This document shows, piece by piece, positions 16,187 through 56,928 of a stretch of DNA of 64,000 bases; position 1 is the first letter of the stretch, and each line of letters starts with the position of its first letter. Position numbers and translations under genes: made by a program. Under the pieces are notes generated by a model. The model did not search any database. It was not told the origin of the DNA and worked only from the letters and a program-made list of their open reading frames with translations. The stretch is from positions 248,001 to 312,000 of IMG/VR virus record IMGVR_UViG_3300024259_002152. One strand, given 5' to 3'.

Positions 16187-16214
16187 TTGACAAAGTAGAA
16201 TTTGTCGATATAAT
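16187..16214 (+). promoter_or_regulatory. consensus sigma70 promoter upstream of RNA cluster
   Basis: TTGACA(16187-92)-N16-TATAAT(16209-14); GACAAA/TTTGTC inverted repeat overlaps it. Confidence 0.8.
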
Positions 16215-16244
16215 ACTATCATTGACAAGTAAATAGAGAGAATG

Positions 16245-16458
16245 ATATGGGTTGAAGGTGTGTAGGTTATCGAAAATACTGGCCCTAAGGTTGGCATCTC
16301 AGGGAACGCTACTCGATAGAGTAGTTGGGGCGACTGAGTGAGAATACCGAGCAACCTGGATGTATTTCCAGGCTCTGCGTGCCGAATACGATACCCTTCG
16401 GGATTCGTACAGGTGGCCATAAGTGCTCCAATTCCCTATGCCCGTGACATATCCATAT
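16245..16458 (+). ncRNA. unassigned structured RNA 1 (~214 nt)
   Basis: GC-rich; 5'/3' closing helix ATATGGGT/ATCCATAT; nested helices TGGCC/GGCCA, TTGGCAT/GTGCCGA, CTCAG/CTGAG, CTACTC/GAGTAG, CCTGGA/TCCAGG; C-UUCG-G loop. Confidence 0.65.
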
Positions 16459-16462
16459 TTTT

Positions 16463-16686
16463 TAATTAATATGTTGGCTGCATGGTGTGAAAACGTTGAG
16501 AGGCGACATGCTGAAACCACATGAAAAGCTTGAACTGCTTTTTACAGAAAGTAGGTGCGGGTTTAATAAATGGTGGGTATAAAATTTGCCCAAGGGTATC
16601 GAGGGCCTTTGGTAGCCGCCGCGTACGGCAAGCCATAAATCGTAGCAAGTAGCGGGTAAAGCCAATCTTGTCCAACATGTTAATTA
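16463..16686 (+). ncRNA. unassigned structured RNA 2 (~224 nt)
   Basis: 15-bp closing helix TAATTAATATGTTGG/CCAACATGTTAATTA (one G-U); hairpins AAAAGC/GCTTTT, TGGGTA/TGCCCA, GCCG/CGGC. Confidence 0.62.
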
Positions 16687-16709
16687 TTTGTTCTTTAAAA
16701 AATAAATAT

Positions 16710-17054
16710 GGGGTCGAAAGGTTTTCGATTAGATTAGGAGAAATCAACGGCGTGTACGAGATAGTAGTTGGCTCGTTAAAAATCTACTAAAAACTGTAAT
16801 TGGCAACAATTATGCAATGGCTGCCTAAGCAAAATTAGGTTGTCTATCTTCTGATTCCTATTAGGAAGAATAGGCAAAAGCAATAGGATAGCATAAACTC
16901 TTTTTCTCAAGAGAGGTGAAGCGAAATTAATTTGGGATAGAAATGATGAACCCTGTCAATTGGGGTCAGAGTTTTGAAATTTAAATAATTGACTACACAC
17001 GTAGAAGTTGATTTTGAAATATTCTAAGACTGGGCTTCGATGCCCACGACTCCA
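16710..17054 (+). ncRNA. ssrA: tmRNA; tag (A)GNNYAMAA
   Basis: Acceptor stem GGGGTCG/CGACTCC-A with G3:U70; T arm TGGGC-TTCGAT-GCCCA; pk1 CGAG/CTCG plus TAGTAG/CTACTA; tag ORF 16802-16828. Confidence 0.93.
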
Positions 17055-17102
17055 CTTTTAAAAAAACGCCTATCAAAAAGGCATATAATAAGATAGGACA
17101 TT

Positions 17103-17363
17103 ATGGACAATAAGGCAATAGACAGACCATTTGATGAAGAAATTCTTAAACAGGCAACCTCTATGGCTCAGGATTATCATATTGTCCTTGAGGGGGATCA
17201 GAAGTCAGGATTTGTTGGGACATGGTGCGAATATCCCTCAATTATAGGAGATGGAGAAACAAAAGAAGAATGTATAGAAAGCACTAGAGAAGCTATTACT
17301 GTTGCTCTTGCCTATTTGCTAGAGACAGGGCAAGAACTTCCTAAGGTGAATGAGGAACTATGA
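17103..17363 (+). CDS. hicB: HicB-family antitoxin (orphan)
   Basis: Y.IVL....GFVG.W.EYP.IIGDGETKEECIE..REAI...L.....ELP. Confidence 0.8.
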   Translation: MDNKAIDRPFDEEILKQATSMAQDYHIVLEGDQKSGFVGTWCEYPSIIGDGETKEECIESTREAITVALAYLLETGQELPKVNEEL

Positions 17364-17689
17364 TGGTAAAAGAAGTGATTTATGGAATCGGCCCAAATCC
17401 GATGGAAGAACAATATAGAGAGGAAGATATGGAGTGTTCTTCTTTTGTTGTTTATATCTGCGATAAGAAAACATGGGAAGAGAAACATTGTTGCAGCAGT
17501 TCGGTAGATAAGGAAATTATTAAAGAACTCAAGGAAGCAGGTTTTGAAGAGGTTACGTCCGCCGTTTTTACAACCATTGCCTCATGTTATCCAAAACTTA
17601 CGATTGATGAATTAAGAAAGATGATAGAACGCCTTGGTTTTGTTCATAACGAAGATTTTGAGACATATATGATAAGCGCTTTTGAGTAA
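17360..17689 (+). CDS. hypothetical protein
   Basis: ORF coupled to hicB. Confidence 0.7.
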   Translation: MMVKEVIYGIGPNPMEEQYREEDMECSSFVVYICDKKTWEEKHCCSSSVDKEIIKELKEAGFEEVTSAVFTTIASCYPKLTIDELRKMIERLGFVHNEDFETYMISAFE

Positions 17690-17713
17690 GATCAATTATT
17701 ATAAGGGGTTGTA

Positions 17714-18739: not shown

Positions 18740-18753
18740 ACGCCAAAATTATT

Positions 18754-35231: not shown

Positions 35232-35269
35232 TCCTAACTCCTTGTTATAAGGGGAGTTAGGATTTTTTT
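35232..35269 (+). terminator. intrinsic terminator candidate
   Basis: TCCTAACTCC...GGAGTTAGGA + T run. Confidence 0.65.
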
Positions 35270-35300
35270 CAAAAATATAGAGAAAAATTATATTTTCTAT

Positions 35301-35328
35301 TTGACTGCAAAGTAGAAAACAGTATAAT
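35301..35328 (+). promoter_or_regulatory. sigma70-type promoter of Ro60 gene
   Basis: TTGACT-N16-TATAAT with AAAGTAGAA in spacer; near-identical block at 56862-56890. Confidence 0.7.
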
Positions 35329-35386
35329 TGCCAAAGTAGAATTCAATATATCTAAATAATTAGGTTGATTTATAAGGAGAACAACA

Positions 35387-37114
35387 ATGGCTAAGTATGC
35401 AAATCATGTAGCGAATCCAAAGACTTCACAAACAAAGAAGGCAAAGAGTACTCAGGTAAAAGGCAGAGCGGGTGGGTATGTTTTCAAGGTCGATGACTGG
35501 ACAAGGCTGAACCGTTTCCTAATCATTGGTAGTGAGAAGGGTTCTTACTATGCCTCTGATCGTGAGTTGACTATGGAGAATTACGACTGCATCCTGAATT
35601 GTTTGAAGTTGGATGCAAAGCGTACTGTCGATACTATTGTAGAGATTAGTGATCAGGGTCGTGCCATTAAGAATGATCCAGCTATCTTTGCATTGGCGGT
35701 ATGCAGTGTTCATGGCGACGAAAAGACCAAAGCATATGCTAATCTAGTTATGCCTAAGGTTGCTCGTTTCTCTACTGCTTTCTTCTCATGGGTTGATTCT
35801 ATCAACACATTGAAGGAAGGTCGTAAGGGTAAGGGTCTGTTAAGAGCCATTGGAAGATGGTATACAGAAAAAGATGCTGTGAAGTTGGCATACCAGATTT
35901 GTAAGTACCCAGGTCGTTCAATAGGTGGCCAAAGATGGACTCACGGGGACGTTTTGCGTCTTGCAAGGATCTCTCCATCTAAGGATGGCAGACCTTCTAG
36001 AAATGGTAGGGCACTAACGATTCCTTCAGAGGACCATGCTACTGTTTTTCATTACGCAACACATGGTATCACAACTGCTGCGACTCTTGCTCAAAGAGAA
36101 AAAGATGCTAAAGCTACTGGTAAGACCCAGGAAGCTCCTGGTATCTCTGTAAAGCAGTATAAAGCTTTGAAGGATAGTAAGCTTAAGTATATCTGGGCAC
36201 ATGAGCAATGTAAGGTTGCGACTAAGAATAGTGAAGTAGTTTCATTAATTAAAAACTACAATCTTACAAGAGAATCTGTCCCTCCACAGTTTAGAAATGA
36301 ATTGTTGGTGCAAAAGGCCCTGCTGCCAGGGATGCCTATGACTGCTTTGATCCGAAATTTGGGAAGCATGACTTCTTCAGGTCTTTTGAAGCCATTGGCT
36401 GATGAGACTTCATTAGTAATCGACAAGATTACAAATGAGGAAATACTGAAGAAGAGTCGTATTCATCCTATGACACTTATGCTGGCATTGAAGACTTACA
36501 GCAGTGGTAGTGGCATGAGGACTACTTGGAAGCCTGTAGGAGCTATCAAAGATGCTATGGAAGATGCTTTCTACAAAGCGTTCAACTATGTTGAGCCAAC
36601 TGGAAAGAAATTTCTTTACGGTATTGATGTTAGTGGTTCTATGGGTTGGTCAGAAGTTAATGGTATGCAAGCACGCGAAGCTGCCGCAGTCGTAGCAATG
36701 ACGTGTGCAAGAACCGAGAAGAACTATGATCTTATGGCTTTTGGTCATGCATTCGTGCCACTTAACATTACCGCTAAGGATAGTTTGGATACTGTGGTTA
36801 GACGAACTGCTAATTTGAATTTTGGCGGAACTGATTGTGCATTACCTATGAAGTATGCAATGAAAAATGGTCTGGATGTTGATGTGTTTGTTGTTCTAAC
36901 GGACAGCGAGACATGGTTTGGTGATATTCATCCATTTGAAGCATTGAAGCAGTATCGCAAGAAGTTCAATAAGAACGCCAAGCTTGCCGTGTTGGCATTT
37001 ACAAGCAATGGCTTTACAATAGCCGACCCAAGCGATGCGGGAATGATGGATATTGTTGGTTTGGATTCTAATGTGCCGAAGGTATTATCTGAATTCGCGG
37101 CAAATAGACTTTAA
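35387..37114 (+). CDS. Ro60/TROVE-domain RNA-binding protein (Rsr-like)
   Basis: AGGYVF..DDW.RL.RFL..GSE.G.YY, MPMTALIRNLG.MT, RIHP, vWA MIDAS DVSGSM, GGTDCALPM, TDSETW. Confidence 0.95.
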   Translation: MAKYANHVANPKTSQTKKAKSTQVKGRAGGYVFKVDDWTRLNRFLIIGSEKGSYYASDRELTMENYDCILNCLKLDAKRTVDTIVEISDQGRAIKNDPAIFALAVCSVHGDEKTKAYANLVMPKVARFSTAFFSWVDSINTLKEGRKGKGLLRAIGRWYTEKDAVKLAYQICKYPGRSIGGQRWTHGDVLRLARISPSKDGRPSRNGRALTIPSEDHATVFHYATHGITTAATLAQREKDAKATGKTQEAPGISVKQYKALKDSKLKYIWAHEQCKVATKNSEVVSLIKNYNLTRESVPPQFRNELLVQKALLPGMPMTALIRNLGSMTSSGLLKPLADETSLVIDKITNEEILKKSRIHPMTLMLALKTYSSGSGMRTTWKPVGAIKDAMEDAFYKAFNYVEPTGKKFLYGIDVSGSMGWSEVNGMQAREAAAVVAMTCARTEKNYDLMAFGHAFVPLNITAKDSLDTVVRRTANLNFGGTDCALPMKYAMKNGLDVDVFVVLTDSETWFGDIHPFEALKQYRKKFNKNAKLAVLAFTSNGFTIADPSDAGMMDIVGLDSNVPKVLSEFAANRL

Positions 37115-37123
37115 TTCCTTTCG

Positions 37124-37156
37124 AGGCAATGGAGCAACCCTCCATTGCCTTTTTTC
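37124..37156 (+). terminator. intrinsic terminator
   Basis: AGGCAATGGAG-CAACC-CTCCATTGCCT + T run. Confidence 0.85.
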
Positions 37157-38280: not shown

Positions 38281-39492
38281 ATGGAACATATGATGAAAGA
38301 GTTATTAAATATTGGAATAGAACATCCTGCTCGTGTAATGGAATTTACCGAGTTGACTCAAGGATTGTTCGCGGAAGTTGCTGATGGTAATGTAAGCGTT
38401 ACTTATCATCCAGAATTTCCACATCTTGCTCTGTTTAAATATACTCAAGATTGCGTTACGGAGAGAAAATGGAACAAATTTTCTCTTATGGCTAGAGGTC
38501 TAATATTAGATCTTCAAGATAAAAAAGTTGTTGCAGTTAGTTTTACAAAATTTTTCAACTACGGAGAAATTGAAGAAGGCTCTCGATCTATCATAGAGCC
38601 AGATTTTCTTGTTACAGAGAAAATGGACGGCTCATTAGGCATAATGTACTTTTTTGCTGATCAATTCAGGTTCGCGACAGCAGGTTCATTTATATCGGAA
38701 CAGGCTCAATGGGCAGATCAATGGGCAAAGGAGCATATAGCCATTGATAAATTAGATAAGACAAGCACTTATCTGTTTGAAATAATTTATCATGAGAATA
38801 AAATTGTGGTTCATTACAATTTTGAAGGACTGGTTTTATTAAGCATATTTAATTCTTATGGATTAGAGTGTAATTATGAGCAAATTAAGTGGGAAGCGTC
38901 ATATATGGGAACTCGGTATGTGAAGCAATATAACTTTGAAGATATGGAAACCATAGTCAATACTGCTAAAACTTTAGATAGCAATAATGAGGGTTATGTC
39001 ATACGCTTCAAAAGCGGAATACGTTTAAAAATTAAAGGCGATGAGTATGTCCGCGTGCATAGACTAATTTCTCAAGTCACACCTCTTGCTATATGGGAAT
39101 CTATGGTTAATGGTGACGACTTAGAAGGGATAAAAAAAGATTTGCCAGAAGAGATGGAAAAAGACTTTGATACTATAAGAGCAATTTTTAATGCAAAATT
39201 AGAAGCTTTTATAAAAGAGGTAGAAAGTCTTTGTGAGCGAACTAAATCTATGTCAGATAAGGAATTAGGCATATATATGCAACAGGGTCTTGTGGCATTC
39301 GGAAACACAGTTTTTAAAGATTCTTTTAAATTTATTTTCCATATGAGAAAGAATAAATTCTATGAATCTCTTAACGATGTGCCATCGTATGGTCGTAGAA
39401 GAATTTTTGCTGCATTTAGACCAAAAGCTAATATATTGGAAGGATATAAGCCTTCGTCAGTAGTTAATAGATTCGCCAATATGGACAACTAA
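38281..39492 (+). CDS. T4 Rnl1-like RNA ligase
   Basis: ARGLI, KFFN, TEKMDGS, FEII, EGYV, LKIK..EY. Confidence 0.9.
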   Translation: MEHMMKELLNIGIEHPARVMEFTELTQGLFAEVADGNVSVTYHPEFPHLALFKYTQDCVTERKWNKFSLMARGLILDLQDKKVVAVSFTKFFNYGEIEEGSRSIIEPDFLVTEKMDGSLGIMYFFADQFRFATAGSFISEQAQWADQWAKEHIAIDKLDKTSTYLFEIIYHENKIVVHYNFEGLVLLSIFNSYGLECNYEQIKWEASYMGTRYVKQYNFEDMETIVNTAKTLDSNNEGYVIRFKSGIRLKIKGDEYVRVHRLISQVTPLAIWESMVNGDDLEGIKKDLPEEMEKDFDTIRAIFNAKLEAFIKEVESLCERTKSMSDKELGIYMQQGLVAFGNTVFKDSFKFIFHMRKNKFYESLNDVPSYGRRRIFAAFRPKANILEGYKPSSVVNRFANMDN

Positions 39493-39545
39493 CTAAATCA
39501 CTTTCCAAAAAACTGATTTGTAAGTGAAAGTGATTTAGTTATAAT
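39490..39545 (+). promoter_or_regulatory. GTGAAA-class promoter embedded in 16-bp inverted repeat
   Basis: TAACTAAATCACTTTC / GAAAGTGATTTAGTTA; TTGTAA-N16-TATAAT. Confidence 0.65.
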
Positions 39546-39582
39546 TCACCTAGTAATATTAGTTGTTTATTTAGGTGTATTT

Positions 39583-40017
39583 ATGAAAAGTGAATATGGG
39601 TGCTATGTTTTAATGTTGTCGTATATTGATGAAAATTGGATGGATATAGGAGGTAATATTTATCCAACAGAAGGTTTTATAGTAGCTAAAAATTTTACGA
39701 GAGATATTGATGTCAGATTTGGATTGAATGGAATTCTATGGGGTAAAACTTGCTATTTTCCATATGAAAAAATAGATAAGGGACACTGGGCAGTAGTAAA
39801 AATAGAATTAACTGAAGATTTAATACAAACTGATTATCGTTATAATCGTTATAAATTTTCTAATGGATTTGTAGTTTATACTGGTAGTCTGAGGTTTGCT
39901 GCTGATTACATCCTTGAACATAAAAATGATTCTGATTTTGGAGAAGAAGGAGGATGGTTGCAGCCAGAAGAGATAGCAGGATCTCAACAATGGATGCAAG
40001 ACCATGCTCTTGTATAA
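39583..40017 (+). CDS. hypothetical protein
   Basis: ORF downstream of promoter. Confidence 0.7.
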   Translation: MKSEYGCYVLMLSYIDENWMDIGGNIYPTEGFIVAKNFTRDIDVRFGLNGILWGKTCYFPYEKIDKGHWAVVKIELTEDLIQTDYRYNRYKFSNGFVVYTGSLRFAADYILEHKNDSDFGEEGGWLQPEEIAGSQQWMQDHALV

Positions 40018-40058
40018 GAATAAGTTTAATATTTAATTAAGAAAAATAGGGAAGCATT

Positions 40059-40847
40059 ATGATAGGTTCCATAATAGGCGATGTAATTGGTTCTCCTTAT
40101 GAGGGGAGAAGGATGAATTTCTTTGATTATGATTTCCCTCTCTTTAATGAAAGATCTACATTTACAGATGATACTATACTAACTGTTGCTACAGCTAAAG
40201 CTATACTTGAAGATATTCCTTACAAAGATGTTTATCTTGAGTTTGGTAGAAAGTATAAACGTAAGGGTTATGGTGGAGCTTTTGAAGCATGGTTATGTTC
40301 TGATGATCCTCAACCTTATGATAGTTGGGGAAATGGTTCTGCTATGAGGGTGGGCCCTATAGGTTTTTATTTTGACGAAGATGATGAAATCTTAAAAGAA
40401 GCAAAAGCAAGTTCAGAAGTAACTCATAATCATCCACATGGAATAGACGGTGCTCAAGCAATAGCTTTAGCTATTCATCATGCTAAAATAGGAGACAGCA
40501 AAGAACAGATAAAAAAAATTGTTTTTGCTGTGACTGGTTATTATGATTTGAATAAAACTGTAGATGATTATAGAAAGAATTATAAGTTTGATACTAGTTG
40601 TAAAGTAACTGTTCCCCAAGCATTAACTGCCTTCTTTGAATCTGATAGTTTTGAAGATTGTATTAGAAAGGCAGTTTTAATGGGGGGAGATACAGATACG
40701 CTGGCGTGTATAGCAGGGTCAGTAGCAGAAGCATATTATAAGATTATTCCTAATAATATTAGCATGAAAGCTTTAGAAAAACTACCTGTAGAATTTTCAA
40801 TTATAATAAATCGTTTTTATAGGGAAGTTTTAGAAGGAAATATATGA
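40059..40847 (+). CDS. ADP-ribosylglycohydrolase (DraG/ARH family)
   Basis: GD..GS.YE, FTDDT, GNGSAMR, VTHNH, GGDTDT. Confidence 0.92.
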   Translation: MIGSIIGDVIGSPYEGRRMNFFDYDFPLFNERSTFTDDTILTVATAKAILEDIPYKDVYLEFGRKYKRKGYGGAFEAWLCSDDPQPYDSWGNGSAMRVGPIGFYFDEDDEILKEAKASSEVTHNHPHGIDGAQAIALAIHHAKIGDSKEQIKKIVFAVTGYYDLNKTVDDYRKNYKFDTSCKVTVPQALTAFFESDSFEDCIRKAVLMGGDTDTLACIAGSVAEAYYKIIPNNISMKALEKLPVEFSIIINRFYREVLEGNI

Positions 40848-41539
40848 TGCTGATTACTGTCATTGCAGATATGCATGGAAATTTGAAGTTTAAAGTTCCA
40901 GAAACGGATTTGCTTTTGATAGCGGGAGATATATGTCCAGCTTCTCATGATCGTTATATATCTATTGGTATGCAAAGAACATGGTTGGAAAACAAATTTA
41001 AAAAATGGATTTATGAACAACCTGTTGATCATGCTATTGCTATAGCTGGAAACCATTGTTGGATATGGGAATGTGCTGAAAGTGAAGTTCCTATATGGTT
41101 TCCTAAAAATTGTGTCGATAAAGAAATGGTGGAGGATAATAAGATTGAATATATAGAGGACTTTTTAGTTTTCTATAAGGATTTAAAAATATATGGGACT
41201 CCTGTTCAGCTTTCTTTTAATAATTGGGCTTTTAATCGGGAAGAAGAATCACTACAAAAGTATTGGGATAATATCCCTGAAGGACTAGATATACTTCTTC
41301 TACATAGTCCTCCATATGGAATATTAGACCAAACTCATCATCCTAAATATCCTTCTAAGCGTATAGGTAGTAAAAGTTTGTTAAAAAGAATAAAACAGGT
41401 TAAACCTAAACTGGTAGTTTTTGGTCATAATCATGGAGACCATGGGGTGGTTGAAGAAGATGGTATTAAGTATATTAATGCTTCTTTAATTGACGAGCAT
41501 TATAAAATGGTAAGAAAACCGATTGTTATAGAAATATAA
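40844..41539 (+). CDS. calcineurin-like metallophosphoesterase
   Basis: D.HG, AGD, GNH, HSPP, FGHNH. Confidence 0.9.
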   Translation: MMLITVIADMHGNLKFKVPETDLLLIAGDICPASHDRYISIGMQRTWLENKFKKWIYEQPVDHAIAIAGNHCWIWECAESEVPIWFPKNCVDKEMVEDNKIEYIEDFLVFYKDLKIYGTPVQLSFNNWAFNREEESLQKYWDNIPEGLDILLLHSPPYGILDQTHHPKYPSKRIGSKSLLKRIKQVKPKLVVFGHNHGDHGVVEEDGIKYINASLIDEHYKMVRKPIVIEI

Positions 41540-48312: not shown

Positions 48313-49002
48313 ATGGTAGTTAAATTGACTCATCCATTTTTGATGGAATGTATTGATCCTAAGGGTCTTTTAAGGAATAACCTTAAAAGCAAATCTATGA
48401 CATTCTCCATGTTTTCTGGCCGACTTAGAAAGCAAGCTACAAAGTATGCGACAGGTGGGGATGGTAAAGTAAACGAAGATAAAGAAAATAAATACAAAGG
48501 TAATGGGTTTGAGTTATTCTGTGAGATATTTGTAAGAATATTTGGTTTTGATATGCTGGTTTCAATAAATCCCGATTCTTATGAAATAGTTGCTGATGGT
48601 GATGATACAGGAGTTGATGGAATAGGAATAGGTAACAATGGAAAAATTCATACCTTACAAGCCAAGTTTTGTATCGGCACAGAAGAATTAACAGCTAATA
48701 GGCAACATCTTACAAATTTCACTTCTGCATCTATGCTTAGGTATAATGTTAATAAAGATGAAGTATGCAATCTTAATAGGCCTGGGATAAAAAGTAAAAT
48801 TAATATGACGATCATGCATACTGGTAAGGGTATTAATCATTATACTGAGAATGATATGCTTTGTGGGCTTATCAGAGAGATAGGTTTAAAGGATATCAAA
48901 AATAAAGTAGATGGTAATAATATTTTTTGGGAATGTTTTAGGAAATCATGGGACAAACATCTTACAGAACTTATGAAGAAAAAGAGAAATGATGAAAAAT
49001 AG
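48313..49002 (+). CDS. restriction endonuclease-like (PD-(D/E)xK / Mrr-type) protein
   Basis: G..FE.F, DTGVDGIG, LQAKF. Confidence 0.7.
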   Translation: MVVKLTHPFLMECIDPKGLLRNNLKSKSMTFSMFSGRLRKQATKYATGGDGKVNEDKENKYKGNGFELFCEIFVRIFGFDMLVSINPDSYEIVADGDDTGVDGIGIGNNGKIHTLQAKFCIGTEELTANRQHLTNFTSASMLRYNVNKDEVCNLNRPGIKSKINMTIMHTGKGINHYTENDMLCGLIREIGLKDIKNKVDGNNIFWECFRKSWDKHLTELMKKKRNDEK

Positions 49003-50743: not shown

Positions 50744-50747
50744 CTCT

Positions 50748-50770
50748 TTCCAGGCGATGAGATTTTCAGT
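50748..50770 (+). repeat. TTCCAGACAA element copy 4 (degenerate)
   Basis: TTCCAGGCGATGAGATTTTCA just after stop. Confidence 0.5.
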
Positions 50771-50811
50771 TTAGTAAAGTGTAAATGATGTTATAAATAT
50801 AAGGAAGCAAG

Positions 50812-51999
50812 ATGGAGCTTACTGAAAAGTTAAAGAAAGAAGCTGTAAGGGGACTTATTAAAGAGATATGCAAAGAAGATGGCTCTATACAAAATGTCCA
50901 TACTCCTTATTCTCTTTGTGAAGATATAATAGAAAAGGCAGTTGATTATATTGAAGATTTAGAGAATAAAAGTATTCTTGTTATGTTTAACCTTGAATTT
51001 ATTGATAGTCTTATTGACTTGGGTATAGATCCTAAGAATATAACTTTTATGTCAGATTCAGAACAAAGAAGAGGTTTGGCAGAAAATTTTTATGAAGTTG
51101 AAGCTATTGAATTTAAATTATCAGATTTAAATGGAGATAATATAATGGGTAAACAATTCGACCATGTGATTGGTAATCCTCCTTATCATAAAAAAGGAAA
51201 TGAAAAAGACACAAAGACGCAAGCGATATGGCCATCATTTGTTGATTTGTCTTTACAGTATTGTAAGGATGATGGGCATTTGTGTTTTGTGCATCCATCA
51301 GGGTGGAGAGGAAATGGAATGTATAAAAAAATAGGTAGGTTGATGAAATCAAAGCAGATAGAATATTTAGAAATTCATGATGAAAAAGATGGGATGAAAG
51401 TATTCGATGCTGAGACAAGATATGATTGGTATGTTTTGCAAAATAAATATAATGAAGATGTTACCGAAATTAAAGACCAAATAGGGAAAATCTCTAAAAT
51501 AAATATAAGAGACATGGAGATAATTCCTAATTTTAACATTATAGATGTTCAGAATCTCATTGCTAAAGATGGGGAGGAAAAGGTTACCGTTCTGTCAGAT
51601 TCTACATATCATACTCAATCTGGTGTTAAAAAAGGGTTTATGAGCGAAACAGAAACAAAGACACATAAATATCCGTGTGTGTATGTGGTTAACTCTGTGG
51701 GAGAAATGCAATTATGGTATTCTTCTGTAAAAAAAGGACATTTTGGGACAACCAAGCTTATATTTTCTAATGGCAGAATATCTTCTGCTAATTATTTTGT
51801 AGATCAAAATGGAGAATACGGTTTGACTCAATTTTCTTATGGGATTATAGACAGTATCGAGAATTTGAGAGATATATATAAAGCAATGAGAACTAAAGAA
51901 TTTAAAAATTTAATGGAGGCATGTTCGATAGGAATGCTTACTATTAATAAAGATGTTTTAAAAACATTCCGTAAAGATTTTTGGAAGGAGTTTGTATAA
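50812..51999 (+). CDS. Eco57I-like N6-adenine methyltransferase domain + target recognition region
   Basis: FDHVIGNPPY, W..FV, GHLCFVHPSGW; no clear FxGxG motif. Confidence 0.8.
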   Translation: MELTEKLKKEAVRGLIKEICKEDGSIQNVHTPYSLCEDIIEKAVDYIEDLENKSILVMFNLEFIDSLIDLGIDPKNITFMSDSEQRRGLAENFYEVEAIEFKLSDLNGDNIMGKQFDHVIGNPPYHKKGNEKDTKTQAIWPSFVDLSLQYCKDDGHLCFVHPSGWRGNGMYKKIGRLMKSKQIEYLEIHDEKDGMKVFDAETRYDWYVLQNKYNEDVTEIKDQIGKISKINIRDMEIIPNFNIIDVQNLIAKDGEEKVTVLSDSTYHTQSGVKKGFMSETETKTHKYPCVYVVNSVGEMQLWYSSVKKGHFGTTKLIFSNGRISSANYFVDQNGEYGLTQFSYGIIDSIENLRDIYKAMRTKEFKNLMEACSIGMLTINKDVLKTFRKDFWKEFV

Positions 52000-52604
52000 T
52001 GGTGAAAGAAATAACAAATACAGAACAAGTTTTAAAGAATGAGGAAAGAAGAAAAAAAGAGCAGAAGCAAACCGCAGAAGTATTCACACCTGATTCATTA
52101 GTGAATGAAATGTTAGATAAATTGCCTGAGGAATCGTGGAAAGAGAGGAAAACTTTTATAGACCCTGCTTGTGGTAATGGTAATTTTTTAGTTCATATAT
52201 TAAATAGAAAATTAAAAAGAGGCCATGATTCAGTTGGAGCTTTAAAATCTATTTATGGGCTTGATATTGAACAGAGTAATATTTTTGAATGTAGATTAAG
52301 ACTTTTAAAAATTGTTAGTTTGCAAGAAGAACTAACTGAAGAACATCTTAAAGCAGTTACTATAAATATTAAATATTTAAATAGTAAAAAGTGGCCTAAT
52401 GGTTCTCTTGACTATGATATGGAATTTAGAAATAATGCTAATCTTCAAACTATTAAAGAATGGTTAGAAGATATTAAAAAAAATGGTCTCGATCATGTGG
52501 CTATACCTGATAATATTGAATACACTATCGCAACCCCAGCTTTGGAAAATGGGAAAATATCAAACAGGAATGTAGAAAGTATTGATATGTTTGGAGATGA
52601 TTAA
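51999..52604 (+). CDS. SAM-binding N6 methylase-like subunit
   Basis: EVFTP..LV.EML, DPACGNGNFL, IYGLDI; no NPPY. Confidence 0.8.
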   Translation: MVKEITNTEQVLKNEERRKKEQKQTAEVFTPDSLVNEMLDKLPEESWKERKTFIDPACGNGNFLVHILNRKLKRGHDSVGALKSIYGLDIEQSNIFECRLRLLKIVSLQEELTEEHLKAVTINIKYLNSKKWPNGSLDYDMEFRNNANLQTIKEWLEDIKKNGLDHVAIPDNIEYTIATPALENGKISNRNVESIDMFGDD

Positions 52605-52698
52605 AAATTCCAGACAACGCTTTTCTTAAAATAGTAGCATAGAAAGTGTGTTTTTCAACTAGAACAGTGTTTTTTAAAGAAACGAAGGCGCAAAAATG
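52604..52698 (+). repeat. TTCCAGACAA element copy 5 (long form)
   Basis: Core at 52608, abutting stop codon. Confidence 0.85.
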
Positions 52699-53016
52699 GC
52701 ATTAGAAGTTACAATTATTCCCATCAAATGGCAAAAATTAGATGACAATATCCCTACTCTTAACTGTCCTGTTTGTGGAAAAGAGTGGGAACAAGAAGGA
52801 GGATATCCAGTAACTCCTTGTGAGCATCTAAAGTTTCGTTATCTAGAGGGAATTAATGTTGAATACTTCGGAGACTGGGATCATAACAATTTTGATTTGG
52901 ATGAAGTTTTGAAGGGCAAAATAACTGATCAGATTAGTGTTATATATCTATTTGAAGGGACCTCTATGTCTTGCGGTCCCGTTTTTACGAGTATTTACTA
53001 TGGCGTAAAAGAGTAA
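52696..53016 (+). CDS. hypothetical protein (CPVC..PCEH)
   Basis: Putative Zn-binding residues. Confidence 0.7.
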   Translation: MALEVTIIPIKWQKLDDNIPTLNCPVCGKEWEQEGGYPVTPCEHLKFRYLEGINVEYFGDWDHNNFDLDEVLKGKITDQISVIYLFEGTSMSCGPVFTSIYYGVKE

Positions 53017-53025
53017 TATTTCGTA

Positions 53026-53062
53026 AAAATTCCAGACAACGCTTTTTTCAGGGTTGTAAGAT
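53026..53062 (+). repeat. TTCCAGACAA element copy 6 (short form)
   Basis: Core at 53030. Confidence 0.8.
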
Positions 53063-53275
53063 ATGAAAAAGTTAATTGAAGCATTACAAATATTGTTGAA
53101 ATATGGTAATCCTGCTTATCCTACTCATTGCGAACATGATGTATTGATTATTTGTGGAATAGAACCTAAGAATGTCTCTCAAGAAGATATTGAGAAATTG
53201 GGTGAATTAGGATTTATTATTAGTAAAGAATACGGGACCGAGTCTTTCAGTTCATTTCGATATGGATCTGCATAA
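53063..53275 (+). CDS. hypothetical phage protein
   Basis: LIEALQI.LKY, PTHCEHD. Confidence 0.75.
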   Translation: MKKLIEALQILLKYGNPAYPTHCEHDVLIICGIEPKNVSQEDIEKLGELGFIISKEYGTESFSSFRYGSA

Positions 53276-53370
53276 AATTCCAGACAACGCTTTTCTCAGA
53301 ATTATAGCATAGAAAGTGTGTTTTTTTAACAATAGAGTGGTTTTTAACAAGAAACGGAGATGTAGCGATG
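53274..53370 (+). repeat. TTCCAGACAA element copy 7 (long form)
   Basis: Core at 53278, abutting stop codon. Confidence 0.85.
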
Positions 53371-53823
53371 AACGATGCAAAAAAGAAGTCGATTTTGGAC
53401 AAGTATGAGAGTTGGGAAAGTGTTCCTGCCGCTATTAAGGCATGGATTACTACGGATGCCATAAAAGAGGGTAAAAACCCTGTTATGGTTCGGGCTGGCT
53501 ACAAAGCAGCATTCAAGAGAATCCAGAACAATACCACTTTTACCATCGTGAGAGAAGATGGTGGGTATCTGGGCGGCTGTGTGAGTTCGATTCCTCTTCA
53601 TCATGTCATTAAGGCAAGAAGTGAACAGATGCTCACGGACAAGATTGGAAGAATCTATGAGGACATCCTGGAAGGTAGTAATAAGGATTCCAAGGGATAT
53701 TGGAAGGCAATGTCTTTGAAAAAAGAGAATATTACTTCTCTAGTCGAAGATTTAGAAGCTATTACTGTTGATGGTGTCGAACTCCAAATCATCAGCGATC
53801 CTGAGCATGTAGAGATCCTCTAA
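53368..53823 (+). CDS. hypothetical protein
   Basis: GGAG RBS; higher GC. Confidence 0.75.
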   Translation: MNDAKKKSILDKYESWESVPAAIKAWITTDAIKEGKNPVMVRAGYKAAFKRIQNNTTFTIVREDGGYLGGCVSSIPLHHVIKARSEQMLTDKIGRIYEDILEGSNKDSKGYWKAMSLKKENITSLVEDLEAITVDGVELQIISDPEHVEIL

Positions 53824-53890
53824 CGTATAAGAGAATATGGATCAGCGTCTTAAACAACTATAAAAATAAAGTAGACGCTACCCTAGATCA

Positions 53891-53921
53891 AAGGCACAAG
53901 CTAATAACTTGTGCCTTTTTT
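53891..53921 (+). terminator. intrinsic terminator
   Basis: AAGGCACAAG...CTTGTGCCTT + T run, directly before repeat copy 8. Confidence 0.8.
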
Positions 53922-53926
53922 CATTT

Positions 53927-53960
53927 TTCCAGACAACGCTTTTCTCAAAGTTGTATAATA
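53927..53960 (+). repeat. TTCCAGACAA element copy 8
   Basis: CAGACA-N18-TATAAT. Confidence 0.8.
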
Positions 53961-53989
53961 AATGTGCTAATAAAGGTTGATAGAAAAGT

Positions 53990-54241
53990 ATGGAACAAAG
54001 TTATTTTTTAAGTAAATTAAAGACTCATATAGATAGAACGGCCAATGCTCATGACCCTCAAATCACCGCCAATGCTATTTATTTTATAACTAAACAATAT
54101 CCTGTAAGTGTAATCAGCAAAGAAGCTTACAGAGAAACCCTTAAGAAGATAAGAACTCATTTAGTAGAGAATTTTGGGTGGAAGATGACTGAGGTTCATA
54201 GATGTGTTTGTATCCTACATAGATTGATGAAAATATTTTAA
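53990..54241 (+). CDS. hypothetical protein
   Basis: ORF after repeat. Confidence 0.65.
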   Translation: MEQSYFLSKLKTHIDRTANAHDPQITANAIYFITKQYPVSVISKEAYRETLKKIRTHLVENFGWKMTEVHRCVCILHRLMKIF

Positions 54242-54250
54242 AAAAACATC

Positions 54251-54279
54251 TTGACATGAAAGTGGAAGAAGGGTAAAAT
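54251..54279 (+). promoter_or_regulatory. sigma70 promoter
   Basis: TTGACA-N17-TAAAAT with TGAAAGTG in spacer. Confidence 0.65.
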
Positions 54280-54286
54280 AGACATT

Positions 54287-54523
54287 ATGACATGGAAATC
54301 TATAAAAGGTGTAAAACCCCCTTCTTTGAAAAGAGTATGGATATCCTATTATATAGATGGGATTTTAACTAAACAATATCAAACTTATGCTAAAGCTGTA
54401 GGAAAAGATCCTCATGGAGATATTTTTTGGCATGATTTTATGACTGGCAAAGTTCTTGATAATAGTAGAATTACAGTGTCTCATTGGATGGCAATTCCTG
54501 ATAATCCAATTCTTAATTTATGA
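54287..54523 (+). CDS. DUF551-like phage protein
   Basis: W.SI...P ... VSHWMAIP..P. Confidence 0.65.
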   Translation: MTWKSIKGVKPPSLKRVWISYYIDGILTKQYQTYAKAVGKDPHGDIFWHDFMTGKVLDNSRITVSHWMAIPDNPILNL

Positions 54524-54570
54524 TGATTAGTAGTCGTAACTCACAATATTTTTTTGAAAGGTTTGGTATC

Positions 54571-55854
54571 ATGGCGAAGAGTAGTAAATCACGTAGGAAA
54601 AAAGGCGGGTCTGCCCCTGTAACTCCTAGGCAGACAATTGTTCACGAAATCTCTCAAGCAACTAATGAGACAATCGTTCCCGAAAAAATGAGAACCCCAA
54701 AAATCTCTCATTTTTTTATCGATGTCGTGAAGAAAGTTCAAAAAGGGGTGGCTTATTATTCGGGGGATATGAGTTTGGCTGAGTTAGCAGCTTTGACTCA
54801 TGTGGATAATTACGATGGGGAGTGTGCGGATGTGGCAGGTAAGGGTCAAAGAGCATTGTGCGAAACGAGAGGTAAGCAATTTATGAATTTTATTGCTGAC
54901 CGAGACAATCTATGTTTTATGGAGATCCTTCTTAATGAACGTGAAAAAGAGATAACATTCACGTCTCTAAAACAAATGGGAATTTCTGTTCCTCAATATG
55001 ACAAATTGTCAGCTATGCATGGGGTTCTTGAGATTCCTATTTCTGTTAGATTGTATGTCTATGATGGGCAAACAAGACGGTTTGGTTATTTAAGTTTGCT
55101 TCATTTTGATCTAGACATGTTGGGAACAGATGCTTATAAGAGTTTTAAACATATGAGAGTTCCTTTCTGTTTATGTCAGGTATCTGCTGGTCAAGAAACA
55201 ACTTTGTTTCTTCATCACAATAAGCAAACTTCAGTGCCTAATGATCATAAGGCAATGGTTTCTTGGCATGCAAATAAATCATCAAGTCAGGTAAAGACTG
55301 ATAGTTATTCCGAGAAAACACGTTCCGTCATTGCTGGTATGACATTCATGATGGATAGAGATAGAACTAATCCATGGTATGGAAGAATTGGTATGCCCGA
55401 TCTTCCTAAGGAAGAAAATAAGCTACGCTTGGGAACACAGGGCAGCTTTAATACAGGACTGAAACGTTTTGTTGGATGGTTGAATAACCAATATTGGAGT
55501 CCTGAAACTTCTTACGAGGAAAAGAGTCAGGACTTGAAAGAAATATGCACCGTATTCTGGAGATCAGTGCAAAAAGTTTGCCCCAAGATATGGAGAACTC
55601 CTGAAGATTATATTCAGTTAAAATCTTTTGGAATTGCAACTTTAAGTTTGCTGATGCATACTCTGTATATCGATTTTTTCGATAGAGATATCGAATGGAC
55701 TATTGATAACATTCATAAGCATTTGAAGAAGAGTAAAATTATTACAACTCCTAAAATGTGGGAATGTGGCGGAGAACTCTCCAAAAGGGGAGGTAATTAC
55801 AAATCTCTTCAATCTCTTGAGCGGGATATATATGACCAGATCAGAAGGAATTAG
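54571..55854 (+). CDS. DGQHR-domain (DndB/ParB-like) protein
   Basis: GQRAL...R, YDGQTR, E..LF...N. Confidence 0.75.
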   Translation: MAKSSKSRRKKGGSAPVTPRQTIVHEISQATNETIVPEKMRTPKISHFFIDVVKKVQKGVAYYSGDMSLAELAALTHVDNYDGECADVAGKGQRALCETRGKQFMNFIADRDNLCFMEILLNEREKEITFTSLKQMGISVPQYDKLSAMHGVLEIPISVRLYVYDGQTRRFGYLSLLHFDLDMLGTDAYKSFKHMRVPFCLCQVSAGQETTLFLHHNKQTSVPNDHKAMVSWHANKSSSQVKTDSYSEKTRSVIAGMTFMMDRDRTNPWYGRIGMPDLPKEENKLRLGTQGSFNTGLKRFVGWLNNQYWSPETSYEEKSQDLKEICTVFWRSVQKVCPKIWRTPEDYIQLKSFGIATLSLLMHTLYIDFFDRDIEWTIDNIHKHLKKSKIITTPKMWECGGELSKRGGNYKSLQSLERDIYDQIRRN

Positions 55855-55861
55855 AAGCTAC

Positions 55862-55895
55862 GGGGAGTGGTTAATATCCACTCCCCTTCTTTTTT
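55862..55895 (+). terminator. intrinsic terminator
   Basis: GGGGAGTGG-TTAATAT-CCACTCCCC + T run, directly before repeat copy 9. Confidence 0.8.
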
Positions 55896-55930
55896 CCAGA
55901 CAATGAGTTTCTCAAAATGGTGATATATAA
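55894..55930 (+). repeat. TTCCAGACAA element copy 9
   Basis: TTCCAGACAATGAGTTTCTCAAAAT. Confidence 0.8.
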
Positions 55931-56062
55931 ATGTTAATTCTGATAAACTTATTTTCGAGGAGATAAAGATGCCAAGAAATCGGACAATCTTATGGGAGCA
56001 ATAACAGATCGTCTTGATGGTGTTCCTTCTATTTTTAATGAATTTGAATTGGAAAAAAAGTA

Positions 56063-56380
56063 ATGGTAGAGCCAATTAAACCTAGAGAACTCACATCGTT
56101 ACCTAATCAAGTTCGATTATTGCCTAATGAAGTCATAGAAGCTTTTAATGAGTTAATAGTGGAAAAGTGGGATGGCAGTTCTTCTGTTATTTTGCAAATT
56201 GAGGCAATATCAAAAATTTTAAGAAAATTTAAATTTCAAGGGCTTACTAGGCAACAAATATTTAGAAGAAGATATCTGGAGATAGAGGGCATTTTTAGAA
56301 AAGTGGGTTGGAAAGTAACTTATAGTAGACCCTCTCATAGTCAAGATCCTTTTGAACCATTTTTCAAGTTTGAAAAGTAA
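56063..56380 (+). CDS. hypothetical phage protein
   Basis: P.EVIEAFNELI, FRKVGWKVTY..P. Confidence 0.75.
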   Translation: MVEPIKPRELTSLPNQVRLLPNEVIEAFNELIVEKWDGSSSVILQIEAISKILRKFKFQGLTRQQIFRRRYLEIEGIFRKVGWKVTYSRPSHSQDPFEPFFKFEK

Positions 56381-56435
56381 GTAAAAAAGTTATGAATTGG
56401 AAATACGAAGTAAAACTGAATGGTAGGAGAATATA

Positions 56436-56795
56436 ATGTTATTGTCTAGTAAGATAAGATGGTCGATGCTATCTGTATTGGCTTTTGTTGTTGGTATAAT
56501 AATCACTGTCCAATGGATAGGAACAGAGCATGGGATGAGAGTATGGGACTTATTTAAAAGACCTGATGTGGTAGAAAAGATTGTAGAAGTAGAAACTATA
56601 AAAGTTATAACTATCTCCGATGACTCAACAATACAAATCATTAATCAAGAGTATAGAGATGCTCTTCTACAAATTTCTGCGGTAACTTTTAATAATGATA
56701 GATATGGTGAAAATACATATAACACTATGCACCAATATGCTATAACAGCCCTGGCGATACCAAAAACTTTGGATAGAGAAAAAAATAAAGAATAG
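56436..56795 (+). CDS. membrane-anchored hypothetical protein
   Basis: N-terminal TM. Confidence 0.7.
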   Translation: MLLSSKIRWSMLSVLAFVVGIIITVQWIGTEHGMRVWDLFKRPDVVEKIVEVETIKVITISDDSTIQIINQEYRDALLQISAVTFNNDRYGENTYNTMHQYAITALAIPKTLDREKNKE

Positions 56796-56928
56796 TCATA
56801 TCTTCTTATTCTTCATAGGGTTATAGAAATCTAATTATTTTTATTTTCTCTATTGCAAATAAAAGTAGAATACAGTATAATTGTCAAAGTGAAAGTCGGA
56901 AGTAGTAATCTTATTGAAAGGATATGTG

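What the first reader, a model, noticed from the sequence alone, without database searches (positions are those of the whole stretch)
16187..56890. Ro60 gene and the ncRNA cluster share a promoter-spacer box: possible non-canonical Ro60 RNP
Seen: AAAGTAGAA lies in the promoter spacer of the RNA cluster (16192-200), the Ro60 gene (35309-17, again at 35333-41) and the 56929 operon (56862-70). The latter two share AAAGTAGAAwACAGTATAATTGyCAAAGT. Established: Ro60/Rsr binds Y RNAs through a stem formed by pairing of their 5' and 3' ends, and Y RNAs are usually encoded nearby. No Y RNA is evident next to this Ro60 gene. Inference: RNA 1 or RNA 2, both with paired ends though larger than typical Y RNAs, could be co-regulated Ro60 partners. 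Caveat: the 9-mer is A-rich and also occurs in coding sequence.
Basis: inference. Interest (0 to 1): 0.68.

Follow-up and report, generated by a model that had tools for sequence, protein, structure and literature searches.

The report
Giant Y RNA beside phage tmRNA
In a 351-kb marine phage, the first RNA of the tmRNA cluster is an oversized member of a seven-copy Y RNA family, so it probably partners the phage's Ro60 protein, but the shared promoter 9-mer is mostly a variant of the phage's ordinary promoter box and is not what links them.

Summary
In detail: AAAGTAGAA sits in three sigma-70-type promoter spacers, and these are the only three such promoters in the 350,866-bp phage contig. As evidence of co-regulation it is weak. 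Eighteen other promoters carry the near-identical box AAAGTGAAA. The RNA-cluster promoter is a diverged copy of one of those, its box lies in a different register, and it is absent from the orthologous promoters of two relatives.

The conclusion that 'RNA 1' may be a Ro60 partner is nevertheless supported, on different grounds. RNA A (16244-16459) belongs to a structured RNA family with seven copies in this genome and 63 distinct sequences in related contigs, with strong covariation. A covariance model built only from this family finds, at full length, the three Y RNAs directly upstream of the Ro-like gene of Mycobacterium phage LinStu. The conserved blocks match in register, including the published Rsr-binding motif position.

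Three paralogs have the complete YrlA-type tRNA-like module and a fourth has only its T arm. These four lie in the tRNA array 45-49 kb downstream of Ro60, outside the window, so near-canonical Y RNAs do exist on the contig. RNA B is an unidentified conserved RNA that also occurs in a Ro60-less relative. The third RNA is a tmRNA. The Ro60 mRNA leader carries a conserved mimic of the Y RNA stem.

The parts
16187..16214 (+). Sigma-70-type promoter of the RNA cluster (TTGACA, 16 nt, TATAAT), with AAAGTAGAA at 16192-16200. It is a paralog of the Y4 promoter, which carries the general box AAAGTGAAAG.
16244..16459 (+). RNA A, a 216-nt 'giant' Y RNA. The terminal helix pairs 16244-16252 with 16451-16459 and includes invariant G-C, G.U and U-A pairs. 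The GGTTGA block is at 16250-16255. The second helix pairs 16257-16266 with 16435-16443. GTTATCGAA is at 16266-16274 (CGAA at 16271-16274) and CATATC at 16448-16453. The module of about 160 nt between these elements has 50% G+C and no known relative.
16464..16686 (+). RNA B, a conserved structured RNA of unknown kind with paired ends. It lies upstream of the tmRNA in G001, G004 and G006. It is not a Y RNA and is not tied to Ro60.
16688..16701 (+). Inter-RNA spacer TTGTTCTTTAAAAA. It recurs after each RNA of the cluster in G001 and G004 and may be a processing signal.
16710..17057 (+). tmRNA, scoring 124.7 bits in Rfam RF00023 over the full-length model.
35232..35262 (+). Intrinsic terminator that closes the upstream AAA-ATPase transcription unit.
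35295..35341 (+). Ro60 promoter (-35 at 35301-35306, -10 at 35323-35328). An inverted repeat TTCTATTT / AAAGTAGAA brackets the -35 hexamer, and a second AAAGTAGAA lies at about +1 (35333-35341). This palindrome occurs nowhere else in the contig.
35347..35369 (+). Ro60 5'-UTR hairpin. TATATC and GGTTGAT flank a 6-bp stem, reproducing the Y RNA terminal helix and its flanks in permuted order. It ends 4 nt before the Shine-Dalgarno AAGGAG at 35374-35379.
35387..37114 (+). Ro60 (TROVE plus vWA_Ro60 domains), transcribed as a single gene.
37123..37151 (+). Strong intrinsic terminator (12-bp stem and T run) directly after the Ro60 stop codon.
56853..56881 (+). Promoter of the 56929 genes. It is a paralog of the Ro60 promoter, with the box at 56862-56870 in the same register. 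The downstream genes have no Pfam or PHROG family and no orthologs in relatives.
38281..41539 (+). Neighbouring genes with RNA-repair flavour: an Rnl1-type RNA ligase (38281-39492), an ADP-ribosylglycohydrolase (40059-40847) and a metallophosphoesterase (40844-41539). They are context only and are not in the Ro60 transcript.

Best explanation
The window comes from a huge marine phage that encodes a Ro60 protein and its own family of Y RNAs. Every family member has four shared elements. The first is a terminal helix made by the 5' and 3' ends, which ends in invariant G-C, G.U and U-A pairs. The second is a small internal loop, UGA opposite CAY. The third is a second helix. The fourth is a GUUAUCG(A) stretch. 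A variable module is mounted on top of these.

In three copies the module is the complete YrlA-type tRNA mimic: T arm, closed acceptor-like stem and D arm. A fourth copy (Y3) has only the T arm and a short hairpin. One copy has almost no module. Two copies, including RNA A in the window, carry a module of 150-170 nt of unknown kind.

Shown here: the family, its structure, RNA A's membership, and its homology to the Y RNAs encoded beside Ro60 in a mycobacteriophage.

Inferred: Ro60 binds the conserved GGUUGA/CAYAUC stem-loop junction, which occupies the position of the published GNCGAA Rsr motif, and the modules tether Ro60 to different partners, as Y RNA tethers Rsr to PNPase in bacteria.

Also inferred: RNA A is made from one primary transcript with RNA B and the tmRNA, starting at the promoter at 16187. 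The array copies are released by processing of the tRNAs that abut them.

The AAAGTAGAA box is a promoter-level feature of two kinds. At the RNA cluster it is a drifted copy of the general phage box. At Ro60 it is one arm of a conserved palindrome around the -35 hexamer, probably an operator, and this arrangement was duplicated in front of the 56929 genes. It does not by itself define a regulon of Ro60 plus the RNA cluster.
For: Family definition. The pattern GGTTGA-N8-14-GTTATCG occurs 7 times in the contig, all on the + strand, against about 0.05 expected from base composition (my estimate). The reversed-pattern control gave 0 in five relatives. All seven copies are followed by CAYATC and by ends complementary to the bases before GGTTGA.

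Covariation. The terminal helix shows perfect pairing with compensatory changes in 11 sequences, and helix 2 covaries. Model R1 finds 74 matches, 63 of them distinct, in metagenome and phage loci. Of the paired cells, 93% form standard pairs, against 77% in shuffles and 30-56% in slid controls. The covariation score is 0.41 against 0.18, and 0 of 500 shuffles reach it.

YrlA module. In the search of Y6, Rfam YrlA was the best match (25.7 bits), and it covered the T arm, AS and D arm in YrlA order; the only other match at E <= 1 was a 17-nt tmRNA T-arm hit at 7.9 bits. Y2 scores 27.5 bits. ARAGORN calls none of these a tRNA.

Link to Ro60. R1, built from this clade alone, hits three RNAs in the gap directly upstream of the Ro-like gene of phage LinStu. 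The scores are 33.9 bits (E 9e-6, full length), 21.4 bits and 19.2 bits. The best of these is the locus's Rfam YrlA match, at 36.1 bits and also below the gathering score. The blocks GGCCGA / GGUUAYC / CAUGUCU align in register with GGUUGA / GUUAUCG / CAYAUCU, with a C-G to U-A compensatory change. GGCCGA is the GNCGAA motif that Chen et al. 2014 (PMC4201824) connect to Rsr binding.

Co-occurrence. G000, G001 and G004 have both Ro60 and the family. The complete genome G006 has a tRNA array, tmRNA and RNA B but neither Ro60 nor the family.

Promoter. There are 18 promoters with AAGTGAAA against 3 with AAGTAGAA. The RNA A promoter and leader align with the Y4 promoter and leader. The Ro60 box is conserved in G001 and G004, nearly so in G002, and present as three upstream direct repeats in G003.
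Against: There is no binding or expression data; only DNA metagenome runs hold the sequence. RNA A scores only 11.3 bits (E 0.05, local) against R1 because of its long insert, so its membership rests on the three blocks plus end complementarity. No family member reaches the Rfam gathering score for YrlA (69 bits) or Y_RNA. None lies next to Ro60: RNA A is 19 kb upstream and the array copies are 45-49 kb downstream. The third base of the motif is U, not the C of GNCGAA. Co-occurrence rests on three positive genomes and one negative. G005 has Ro60 but no family member on its 44%-complete contig.
Confidence: 0.75

Rival explanations
1. One reading: AAAGTAGAA is the binding site of a dedicated factor that co-regulates Ro60, the RNA cluster and the 56929 genes as one regulon.
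For: These are the only three promoters in the contig with AAGTAGAA. The Ro60 copy is conserved in relatives and forms a palindrome. The one genome whose tmRNA cluster begins with a Y RNA is also the one whose cluster promoter has the box.
Against: At the RNA cluster the box ends 8 nt before the -10 hexamer, against 5 nt at the other two promoters, and it lacks the left arm of the palindrome. That promoter is a paralog of the Y4 promoter, which has the general box. The other six Y RNAs are driven by general-box promoters. The Ro60 promoter of G005 lacks the box.
Confidence: 0.2
2. The RNA family has nothing to do with Ro60. It is a tRNA-array accessory, for example a processing or stability element, or a decoy for host tRNA-cleaving defences, and its likeness to YrlA reflects common descent from tRNA.
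For: Six of the seven copies lie among tRNAs with 1-6-nt spacers. The Rfam matches cover only the tRNA-like part. None is adjacent to Ro60.
Against: The part conserved in all members is the stem, not the tRNA-like module. A model of that stem finds the Ro60-adjacent RNAs of an unrelated actinophage at full length, including two that lack a tRNA-like module. The family is absent from the tRNA array of the Ro60-less relative G006. The stem is mimicked in the Ro60 leader.
Confidence: 0.1
3. The shared 9-mer is chance similarity in A-rich promoter DNA and has no function at any of the three sites.
For: The 9-mer is A-rich, and 5 of the 9 window copies lie in coding sequence. The general box differs from it by two substitutions or one indel.
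Against: At the Ro60 promoter it is retained across phages whose Ro60 proteins are only 64-84% identical, as an inverted repeat in G000, G001 and G004 (degenerate in G002) and as three phased direct repeats in G003.
Confidence: 0.15

Closest known systems
YrlA / YrlB Y RNAs of bacteria and actinobacteriophages (Chen et al. 2014, PMC4201824; Rfam RF02553)
   Same: The stem is formed by the 5' and 3' ends. A conserved G-N-Y-G-A block lies at the junction of helix and internal loop. Three copies have the complete module of T arm, closed acceptor-like stem and D arm in the same permuted order, and a fourth has only the T arm. Short module-less forms sit beside them. A Ro60 gene lies in the same genome. 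The clade-only model recognises the LinStu Y RNAs.
   Different: They are not next to Ro60 but in the tRNA array and at the head of the tmRNA transcript. There are seven paralogs rather than one to three. Two forms are 216-238 nt long, and their relatives reach 269 nt, with non-tRNA modules. The motif reads GGUUGA rather than GNCGAA. Scores are below the Rfam gathering score.
Thermus phage phiLo Ro60 with Yrl1 and Yrl2 (PMC12135203)
   Same: A phage-encoded Ro60 has phage-encoded Y-like RNAs, recognised by a stem, bulge and stem plus a CGAA motif. RNA A and Y6 contain CGAA.
   Different: The phiLo RNAs lie directly upstream of the Ro60 gene and are of ordinary size, and binding was shown by experiment. 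Here nothing has been tested.
Salmonella rsr-yrlBA-rtcBA RNA repair operon (PMC7790460)
   Same: Ro60, Y RNAs and an RNA ligase are encoded by one replicon, with end-healing-type enzymes nearby.
   Different: The ligase here is Rnl1-type, not RtcB. The genes are separate transcription units, and there is no RtcR or sigma-54 control.
Autoregulation of ribosomal-protein and other RNA-binding-protein mRNAs by mimicry of the protein's RNA site
   Same: The Ro60 leader carries the Y RNA terminal helix and both flanking blocks just before the Shine-Dalgarno sequence.
   Different: This rests purely on sequence. The generic hairpin motif alone is not rarer than chance in the genome: 7 copies against 4.35 expected.

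Membership tests
Y RNA (YrlA/YrlB type) | A long stem formed by pairing of the 5' and 3' ends, interrupted by an internal loop or bulge. | tested here: met
   Helices 1 and 2 are supported by covariation in 63 distinct sequences. For RNA A the pairings are 16244-16252 with 16451-16459 and 16257-16266 with 16435-16443.
Y RNA (YrlA/YrlB type) | The conserved Ro60/Rsr-binding motif GNCGAA(N)G near the 5' end (vertebrate GGUCCGA; the 'CGAA motif'). | tested here: inconclusive
   GGUUGA(A/U) occupies the same position and register as GGCCGA in the LinStu Y RNAs, but has U where C is expected. A separate CGAA occurs in RNA A (16271-16274) and in Y6 but not in all members.
Y RNA (YrlA/YrlB type) | A tRNA-like module of T arm, acceptor-like stem-loop and D arm (YrlA only). 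| tested here: not met
   It is not met for RNA A, whose module has no such arms. It is met for paralogs Y2, Y6 and Y7. Y3 has only the T arm.
Y RNA (YrlA/YrlB type) | Encoded next to the Ro60 gene. | tested here: not met
   RNA A lies 19 kb upstream of Ro60 and the others 45-49 kb downstream. Nothing was found in the Ro60 flanks.
Y RNA (YrlA/YrlB type) | Reaches the Rfam gathering score (RF02553, 69 bits; RF00019, 38 bits). | tested here: not met
   The best scores are 27.5 and 25.7 bits for YrlA and 11.8 bits for Y_RNA. The Ro60-adjacent LinStu RNA that Rfam YrlA matches also reaches only 36.1 bits.
Y RNA (YrlA/YrlB type) | Size of 80-130 nt. | tested here: not met
   RNA A is 216 nt and Y5 is 238 nt. 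The other paralogs are 68-135 nt.
Y RNA (YrlA/YrlB type) | Physically bound by Ro60. | not testable with these tools
   No RNA runs hold the sequence, and the complex predictor handles proteins only.
Ro60 / TROVE protein | A TROVE HEAT-repeat ring plus a C-terminal vWA domain. | tested here: met
   Pfam PF05731 at 6e-32 and PF25045 at 1e-62. PDB matches are 1yvp at 3e-116, 9nen at 9e-111 and 2nvo at 3e-84.
tmRNA | A full-length match to the tmRNA covariance model above its gathering score. | tested here: met
   RF00023 scores 124.7 bits against a gathering score of 47, over model positions 1-374. ARAGORN did not call it.

The most novel reading that the evidence does not exclude
This phage clade has diversified Y RNAs into a toolkit in which one Ro60-binding stem carries interchangeable modules: a tRNA mimic, no module, or 150-200-nt structured modules of unknown target. 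One giant form is co-transcribed with the tmRNA. Ro60 limits its own translation by binding a permuted copy of the Y stem in its mRNA leader, so that free Y RNA levels set Ro60 synthesis.
Probability: 0.3. Interest if true: 0.75.

Novelty: new variant of a known kind. Interest (0 to 1): 0.6.

Why it matters
Y RNAs are thought to work as adaptors that tether Ro60 to effectors, but only two kinds of module are known in bacteria: a PNPase-binding loop and a tRNA mimic. A phage clade with seven paralogs on one conserved stem, including 216-269-nt forms with new structured modules, offers a natural series for asking what else Ro60 can be tethered to. The case also shows that searching only the flanks of Ro60 genes, as in the 2014 survey, misses Y RNAs that have moved into tRNA arrays or other RNA operons. 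The leader mimic, if real, would be the first proposed autoregulatory loop for a Ro60 gene. The general promoter box and the Ro60-specific palindrome give handles on transcription in an uncultivated huge phage.

Tried and rejected
- **Rfam on the cluster.** Permissive thresholds over the RNA cluster, the whole window and the Y5 region found nothing for RNA A, RNA B or the large modules.
- **Cultured phages.** BLASTN of the cluster against cultured phages gave no match.
- **Loose 5' pattern in IMG/VR.** The scan returned 115 loci, all of them chance hits once the 3' block and end pairing were required.
- **Second Y-stem-like hairpin before the RNA ligase gene (38248).** I rejected it. It is a terminator-like hairpin and is not conserved in four relatives.
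- **AAAGTAGAA at 60842, after a TATAAT.** It lies among small ORFs and is not a convincing promoter.
- **Leader pattern in IMG/VR.** Of 54 hits, only four precede a Ro60 gene; the rest are coding-sequence coincidences.
- **The 56929 genes.** They have no Pfam or PHROG family and no ortholog in four relatives.
- **Ro60 relatives in prokaryote genomes.** The search gave only one archaeal-labelled MAG contig, so adjacency could not be tested in likely hosts.
- **Public runs.** All are seawater DNA metagenomes. Laying contigs on 1,401 bases, within the operators' 6,000-letter limit, showed the same phage and one variant with a different module between an RNA A-like 5' part and RNA B, but nothing on expression or RNA ends.
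- **Other Ro60 contigs.** G005, G002 and G003 have Ro60, but their contigs are too incomplete to judge whether Y RNAs are present.

Full report
**Setting.** The window is positions 248,001-312,000 of a single 350,866-bp IMG/VR virus contig. The contig has 33% G+C, almost all genes on one strand, and 31 tRNA genes at 327.9-338.0 kb. CheckV estimates it 73% complete. Near-identical DNA occurs only in seawater metagenomes. It is a huge marine phage.

**The observation.** AAAGTAGAA occurs 9 times in the window against 2.05 expected.
- The copies at 16192, 35309 and 56862 lie between good -35 and -10 hexamers.
- The copy at 35333 lies just after the Ro60 -10 hexamer.
- The 29-nt identity between the Ro60 and 56929 promoters is real, at 27 of 29 bases.
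- Contig-wide, only these three promoters carry AAGTAGAA.

The gene at 35387-37114 is an unambiguous Ro60. No Rfam Y RNA lies near it.

**What the box is.** A strict promoter search shows that this phage's standard promoter is TTGAAA(A)GTGAAAG, about 9 nt, then TATAAT. There are 18 copies, all on the + strand. The same box heads orthologous promoters in relatives G001 and G004. AAAGTAGAA differs from AAAGTGAAA by two substitutions or one indel.

The RNA-cluster promoter and its leader align with the promoter and leader of another RNA gene, Y4, which has the general box. The cluster box is therefore a drifted general box. It ends 8 nt before the -10 hexamer, close to the 9-10 nt of general promoters. 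The Ro60 and 56929 boxes end 5 nt before it.

The orthologous RNA-cluster promoters of G001 and G004 have no such box.

At Ro60 the box is something more.
- It is the right arm of an inverted repeat, TTCTAYTT then AARTAGAA, that brackets the -35 hexamer.
- The repeat is conserved in G001 and G004 and degenerate in G002. In G003 it is replaced by three phased direct copies upstream of the -35 hexamer.
- This palindrome occurs nowhere else in the contig.

Ro60 is monocistronic, with a terminator before its promoter and a 12-bp terminator after its stop codon. I read the palindrome as an operator of a dedicated Ro60 promoter. The 56929 promoter is a recent duplicate of it, placed before strain-specific genes of unknown function.

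**The RNA cluster.** The 970-nt gap holds one 12/12 promoter and three RNAs.
- The third RNA is a tmRNA (124.7 bits).
- The second, RNA B (16464-16686), is conserved with covarying ends directly upstream of the tmRNA in G001 and G004. In G006 it is followed by a further RNA and a short ORF before the tmRNA. It matches no Rfam family.
- The first, RNA A (16244-16459), is present only in this genome and a close seawater variant.

**RNA A belongs to a family.** A weak Rfam YrlA search of the whole contig flagged two unannotated elements in the tRNA array. Reading them showed a T arm, a closed acceptor-like stem and a D arm set on a long stem. The 5' strand of that stem begins like RNA A.

The pattern GGTTGA-N8-14-GTTATCG occurs seven times in the contig, all on the + strand. 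The sites are:
- RNA A, in the window
- contig 328,921 (Y2)
- contig 329,211 (Y3)
- contig 330,272 (Y4)
- contig 330,353 (Y5)
- contig 331,688 (Y6)
- contig 332,073 (Y7)

From base composition I expect about 0.05 such matches. The reversed-pattern control gave none in five relatives. All seven copies have a downstream CAYATC followed by bases complementary to those before GGTTGA.

The shared architecture has five parts:
- a terminal helix ending in invariant G-C, G.U and U-A pairs
- an internal loop, UGA opposite CAY
- a second helix
- an unpaired UUAUCG stretch
- a variable module

Both helices covary. G001 has six orthologs and G004 two. A Y4-specific pattern pulled 29 metagenome contigs.

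Model R1, built from 11 sequences, found 74 matches, 63 of them distinct.
- 93% of paired cells form standard pairs, against 77% in shuffles and 30-56% in slid controls.
- 177 cells have changes on both sides, against 55 expected.
- The covariation score is 0.41 against 0.18, and no shuffle of 500 reaches it.

Module types:
- Y2, Y6 and Y7 carry the complete tRNA mimic.
- Y3 has only a T arm and a short hairpin.
- Y4 is a 68-nt minimal form.
- Y5 is 238 nt, and its relatives in nine contigs are 251-269 nt.
- RNA A is 216 nt, with a large structured module of unknown kind.

RNA A scores only 11.3 bits (E 0.05) against R1 because of its long insert. Its membership therefore rests on the three blocks and the end pairing.

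**Are these Y RNAs?** In the search of Y6, Rfam YrlA was the best match, and it covers the module in the YrlA-specific order. The score is 25.7 bits against a gathering score of 69. The only other match at E <= 1 was a 17-nt tmRNA T-arm hit.

As a control I took Mycobacterium phage LinStu, one of 363 cultured-phage records with a Ro-like gene. LinStu is a mycobacteriophage, the group in which Chen et al. 2014 reported YrlA RNAs next to Ro60. Rfam YrlA scores its Ro60-adjacent RNA at only 36.1 bits, again over the module alone. Sub-threshold, module-only matches may therefore be usual for phage YrlAs.

Model R1, trained only on the marine clade, hits that LinStu RNA at full length (33.9 bits, E 9e-6). 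It also hits two shorter RNAs on either side of it (21.4 and 19.2 bits). All three lie in the gap directly upstream of the Ro-like gene.

Their conserved blocks line up in register with those of the marine family:
- GGCCGA with GGUUGA
- GGUUAYC with GUUAUCG
- CAUGUCU with CAYAUCU

The pair after the G.U wobble changes from C-G to U-A in compensating fashion. GGCCGA is the GNCGAA motif that Chen et al. relate to Rsr binding and to the vertebrate GGUCCGA. The phiLo study likewise used stem, bulge and stem plus CGAA to find Y-like RNAs that it then showed to bind phage Ro60.

I conclude that the family consists of Y RNAs and that RNA A is an oversized one.

**Co-occurrence.** Ro60 and the family are both present in G000, G001 and G004. 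G006 is a complete 461-kb relative with terminal repeats. It has a tRNA array, a tmRNA and RNA B, but neither Ro60 nor any family member. G005, G002 and G003 have Ro60 but are fragments. The sample is small but points the right way. It also separates RNA B from Ro60.

**Maturation (inferred).** In the array the Y RNAs abut tRNAs with 1-6-nt spacers, so tRNA 5' and 3' processing would free their ends. In the window, RNA A, RNA B and the tmRNA follow one promoter. A remnant of the ancestral RNA B promoter overlaps the RNA A 3' end. The spacer TTGTTCTTTAAAAA recurs between RNAs of the cluster in relatives.

**A Y-stem mimic in the Ro60 leader.** Aligning Ro60 upstream regions showed TATATC, a 6-bp stem-loop, then GGTTGAT, ending 4 nt before the Shine-Dalgarno sequence (35347-35369). 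This is the Y RNA terminal helix with both flanking blocks, closed by a loop instead of by the RNA ends.

It is present in G000, G001, G004, G005 and a further Ro60 fragment. In G002 the stem differs by compensating changes. It is absent in G003.

The bare hairpin motif is not rarer than chance in the genome: 7 copies against 4.35 expected. A look-alike before the RNA ligase gene is not conserved. The case therefore rests on conservation and position. I put it forward as a hypothesis of autoregulation, not as a finding.

**Neighbourhood.** An AAA ATPase lies upstream. Downstream lie an Rnl1-type RNA ligase, an ADP-ribosylglycohydrolase and a metallophosphoesterase, in separate transcription units. 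This recalls the Salmonella operon that combines Rsr, Y RNAs and RtcB.

**Verdict.**
- The inference is partly supported. RNA A is very probably a Y RNA and so a likely Ro60 partner. RNA B and the tmRNA are not.
- Near-canonical Y RNAs exist elsewhere on the contig.
- The promoter box is weak evidence for co-regulation.

Phage Ro60 and phage Y RNAs are already known. What is new is the seven-member family on one stem, the giant modules, the dispersal into the tRNA array and the tmRNA transcript, and the leader mimic.

Noticed in passing
window 16464-16686; G001 176,898-177,180; G004 259,912-260,088 (minus strand); G006 in L211:895-1130: RNA B is a roughly 225-nt structured RNA with covarying terminal and internal helices. 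A 22-nt loop is invariant in G000, G001 and G006 (the G004 range supplied omitted that part). It lies upstream of the phage tmRNA in four huge-phage genomes, including one without Ro60. It matches no Rfam family.
   Followed up: partly
L018:1380-1500 (G001, between RNA B and the tmRNA); L211:1150-1265 (G006): A further RNA of about 115 nt with paired ends (5' GYCAGUGGCGUG, 3' CCUGCYUGAC-like) sits in the same cluster in G001 and G006 but not in this window. The cluster is therefore a variable array of small RNAs separated by TTGTTCTTTAAAAA-type spacers.
   Followed up: no
whole contig; in the window at 1474, 18754, 20962, 24875, 33546 and 39518: The phage's general promoter is TTGAAA(A)GTGAAAG, about 9 nt, then TATAAT. 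There are 18 copies, all on the + strand, and the same box is found at orthologous promoters in G001 and G004. This suggests an extended -35 or spacer element read by a phage or host factor.
   Followed up: partly
window 35347-35369: The Ro60 5'-UTR hairpin mimics the Y RNA terminal helix and its flanks just upstream of the ribosome-binding site. It is conserved in six of seven Ro60 leaders of the clade.
   Followed up: partly
contig position 166,291 (outside the window): A second palindrome, TTCTATTGACAAGTAGAA, has a TTGACA at its centre. It may be another promoter with the Ro60-type operator layout.
   Followed up: no
window 16710-17057: ARAGORN did not call the tmRNA that Rfam scores at 124.7 bits, so phage tmRNAs of this clade may be missed by routine annotation.
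   Followed up: yes
window 17103-17363: A HicB-like antitoxin domain protein lies directly after the tmRNA (Pfam E 1.4e-5, just under the curated cut-off).
   Followed up: no
window 48989-55854: A group of DNA-modification or restriction-type genes lies here: a ResIII helicase, an Eco57I-like methyltransferase and a DndB-like protein.
   Followed up: no
window 2749-3707 and 7869-8508: Runs of overlapping tandem ORFs of exactly 109 aa (three, then two) suggest a small paralogous gene family.
   Followed up: no
L268:2018-2363 (Mycobacterium phage LinStu, JN412592 127,495-127,840): Three tandem Y RNA-like elements lie upstream of the Ro-like gene. The annotated hypothetical gene gp230 (L268:2216-2389) overlaps two of them and may be spurious.
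   Followed up: partly
window 15900-17300 in runs X3 and X5: A related seawater variant carries an RNA A-like 5' part (about 85% identical over 16261-16314). Roughly 378 nt of different sequence follow, and then RNA B. The large module is therefore swapped between close relatives.
   Followed up: no
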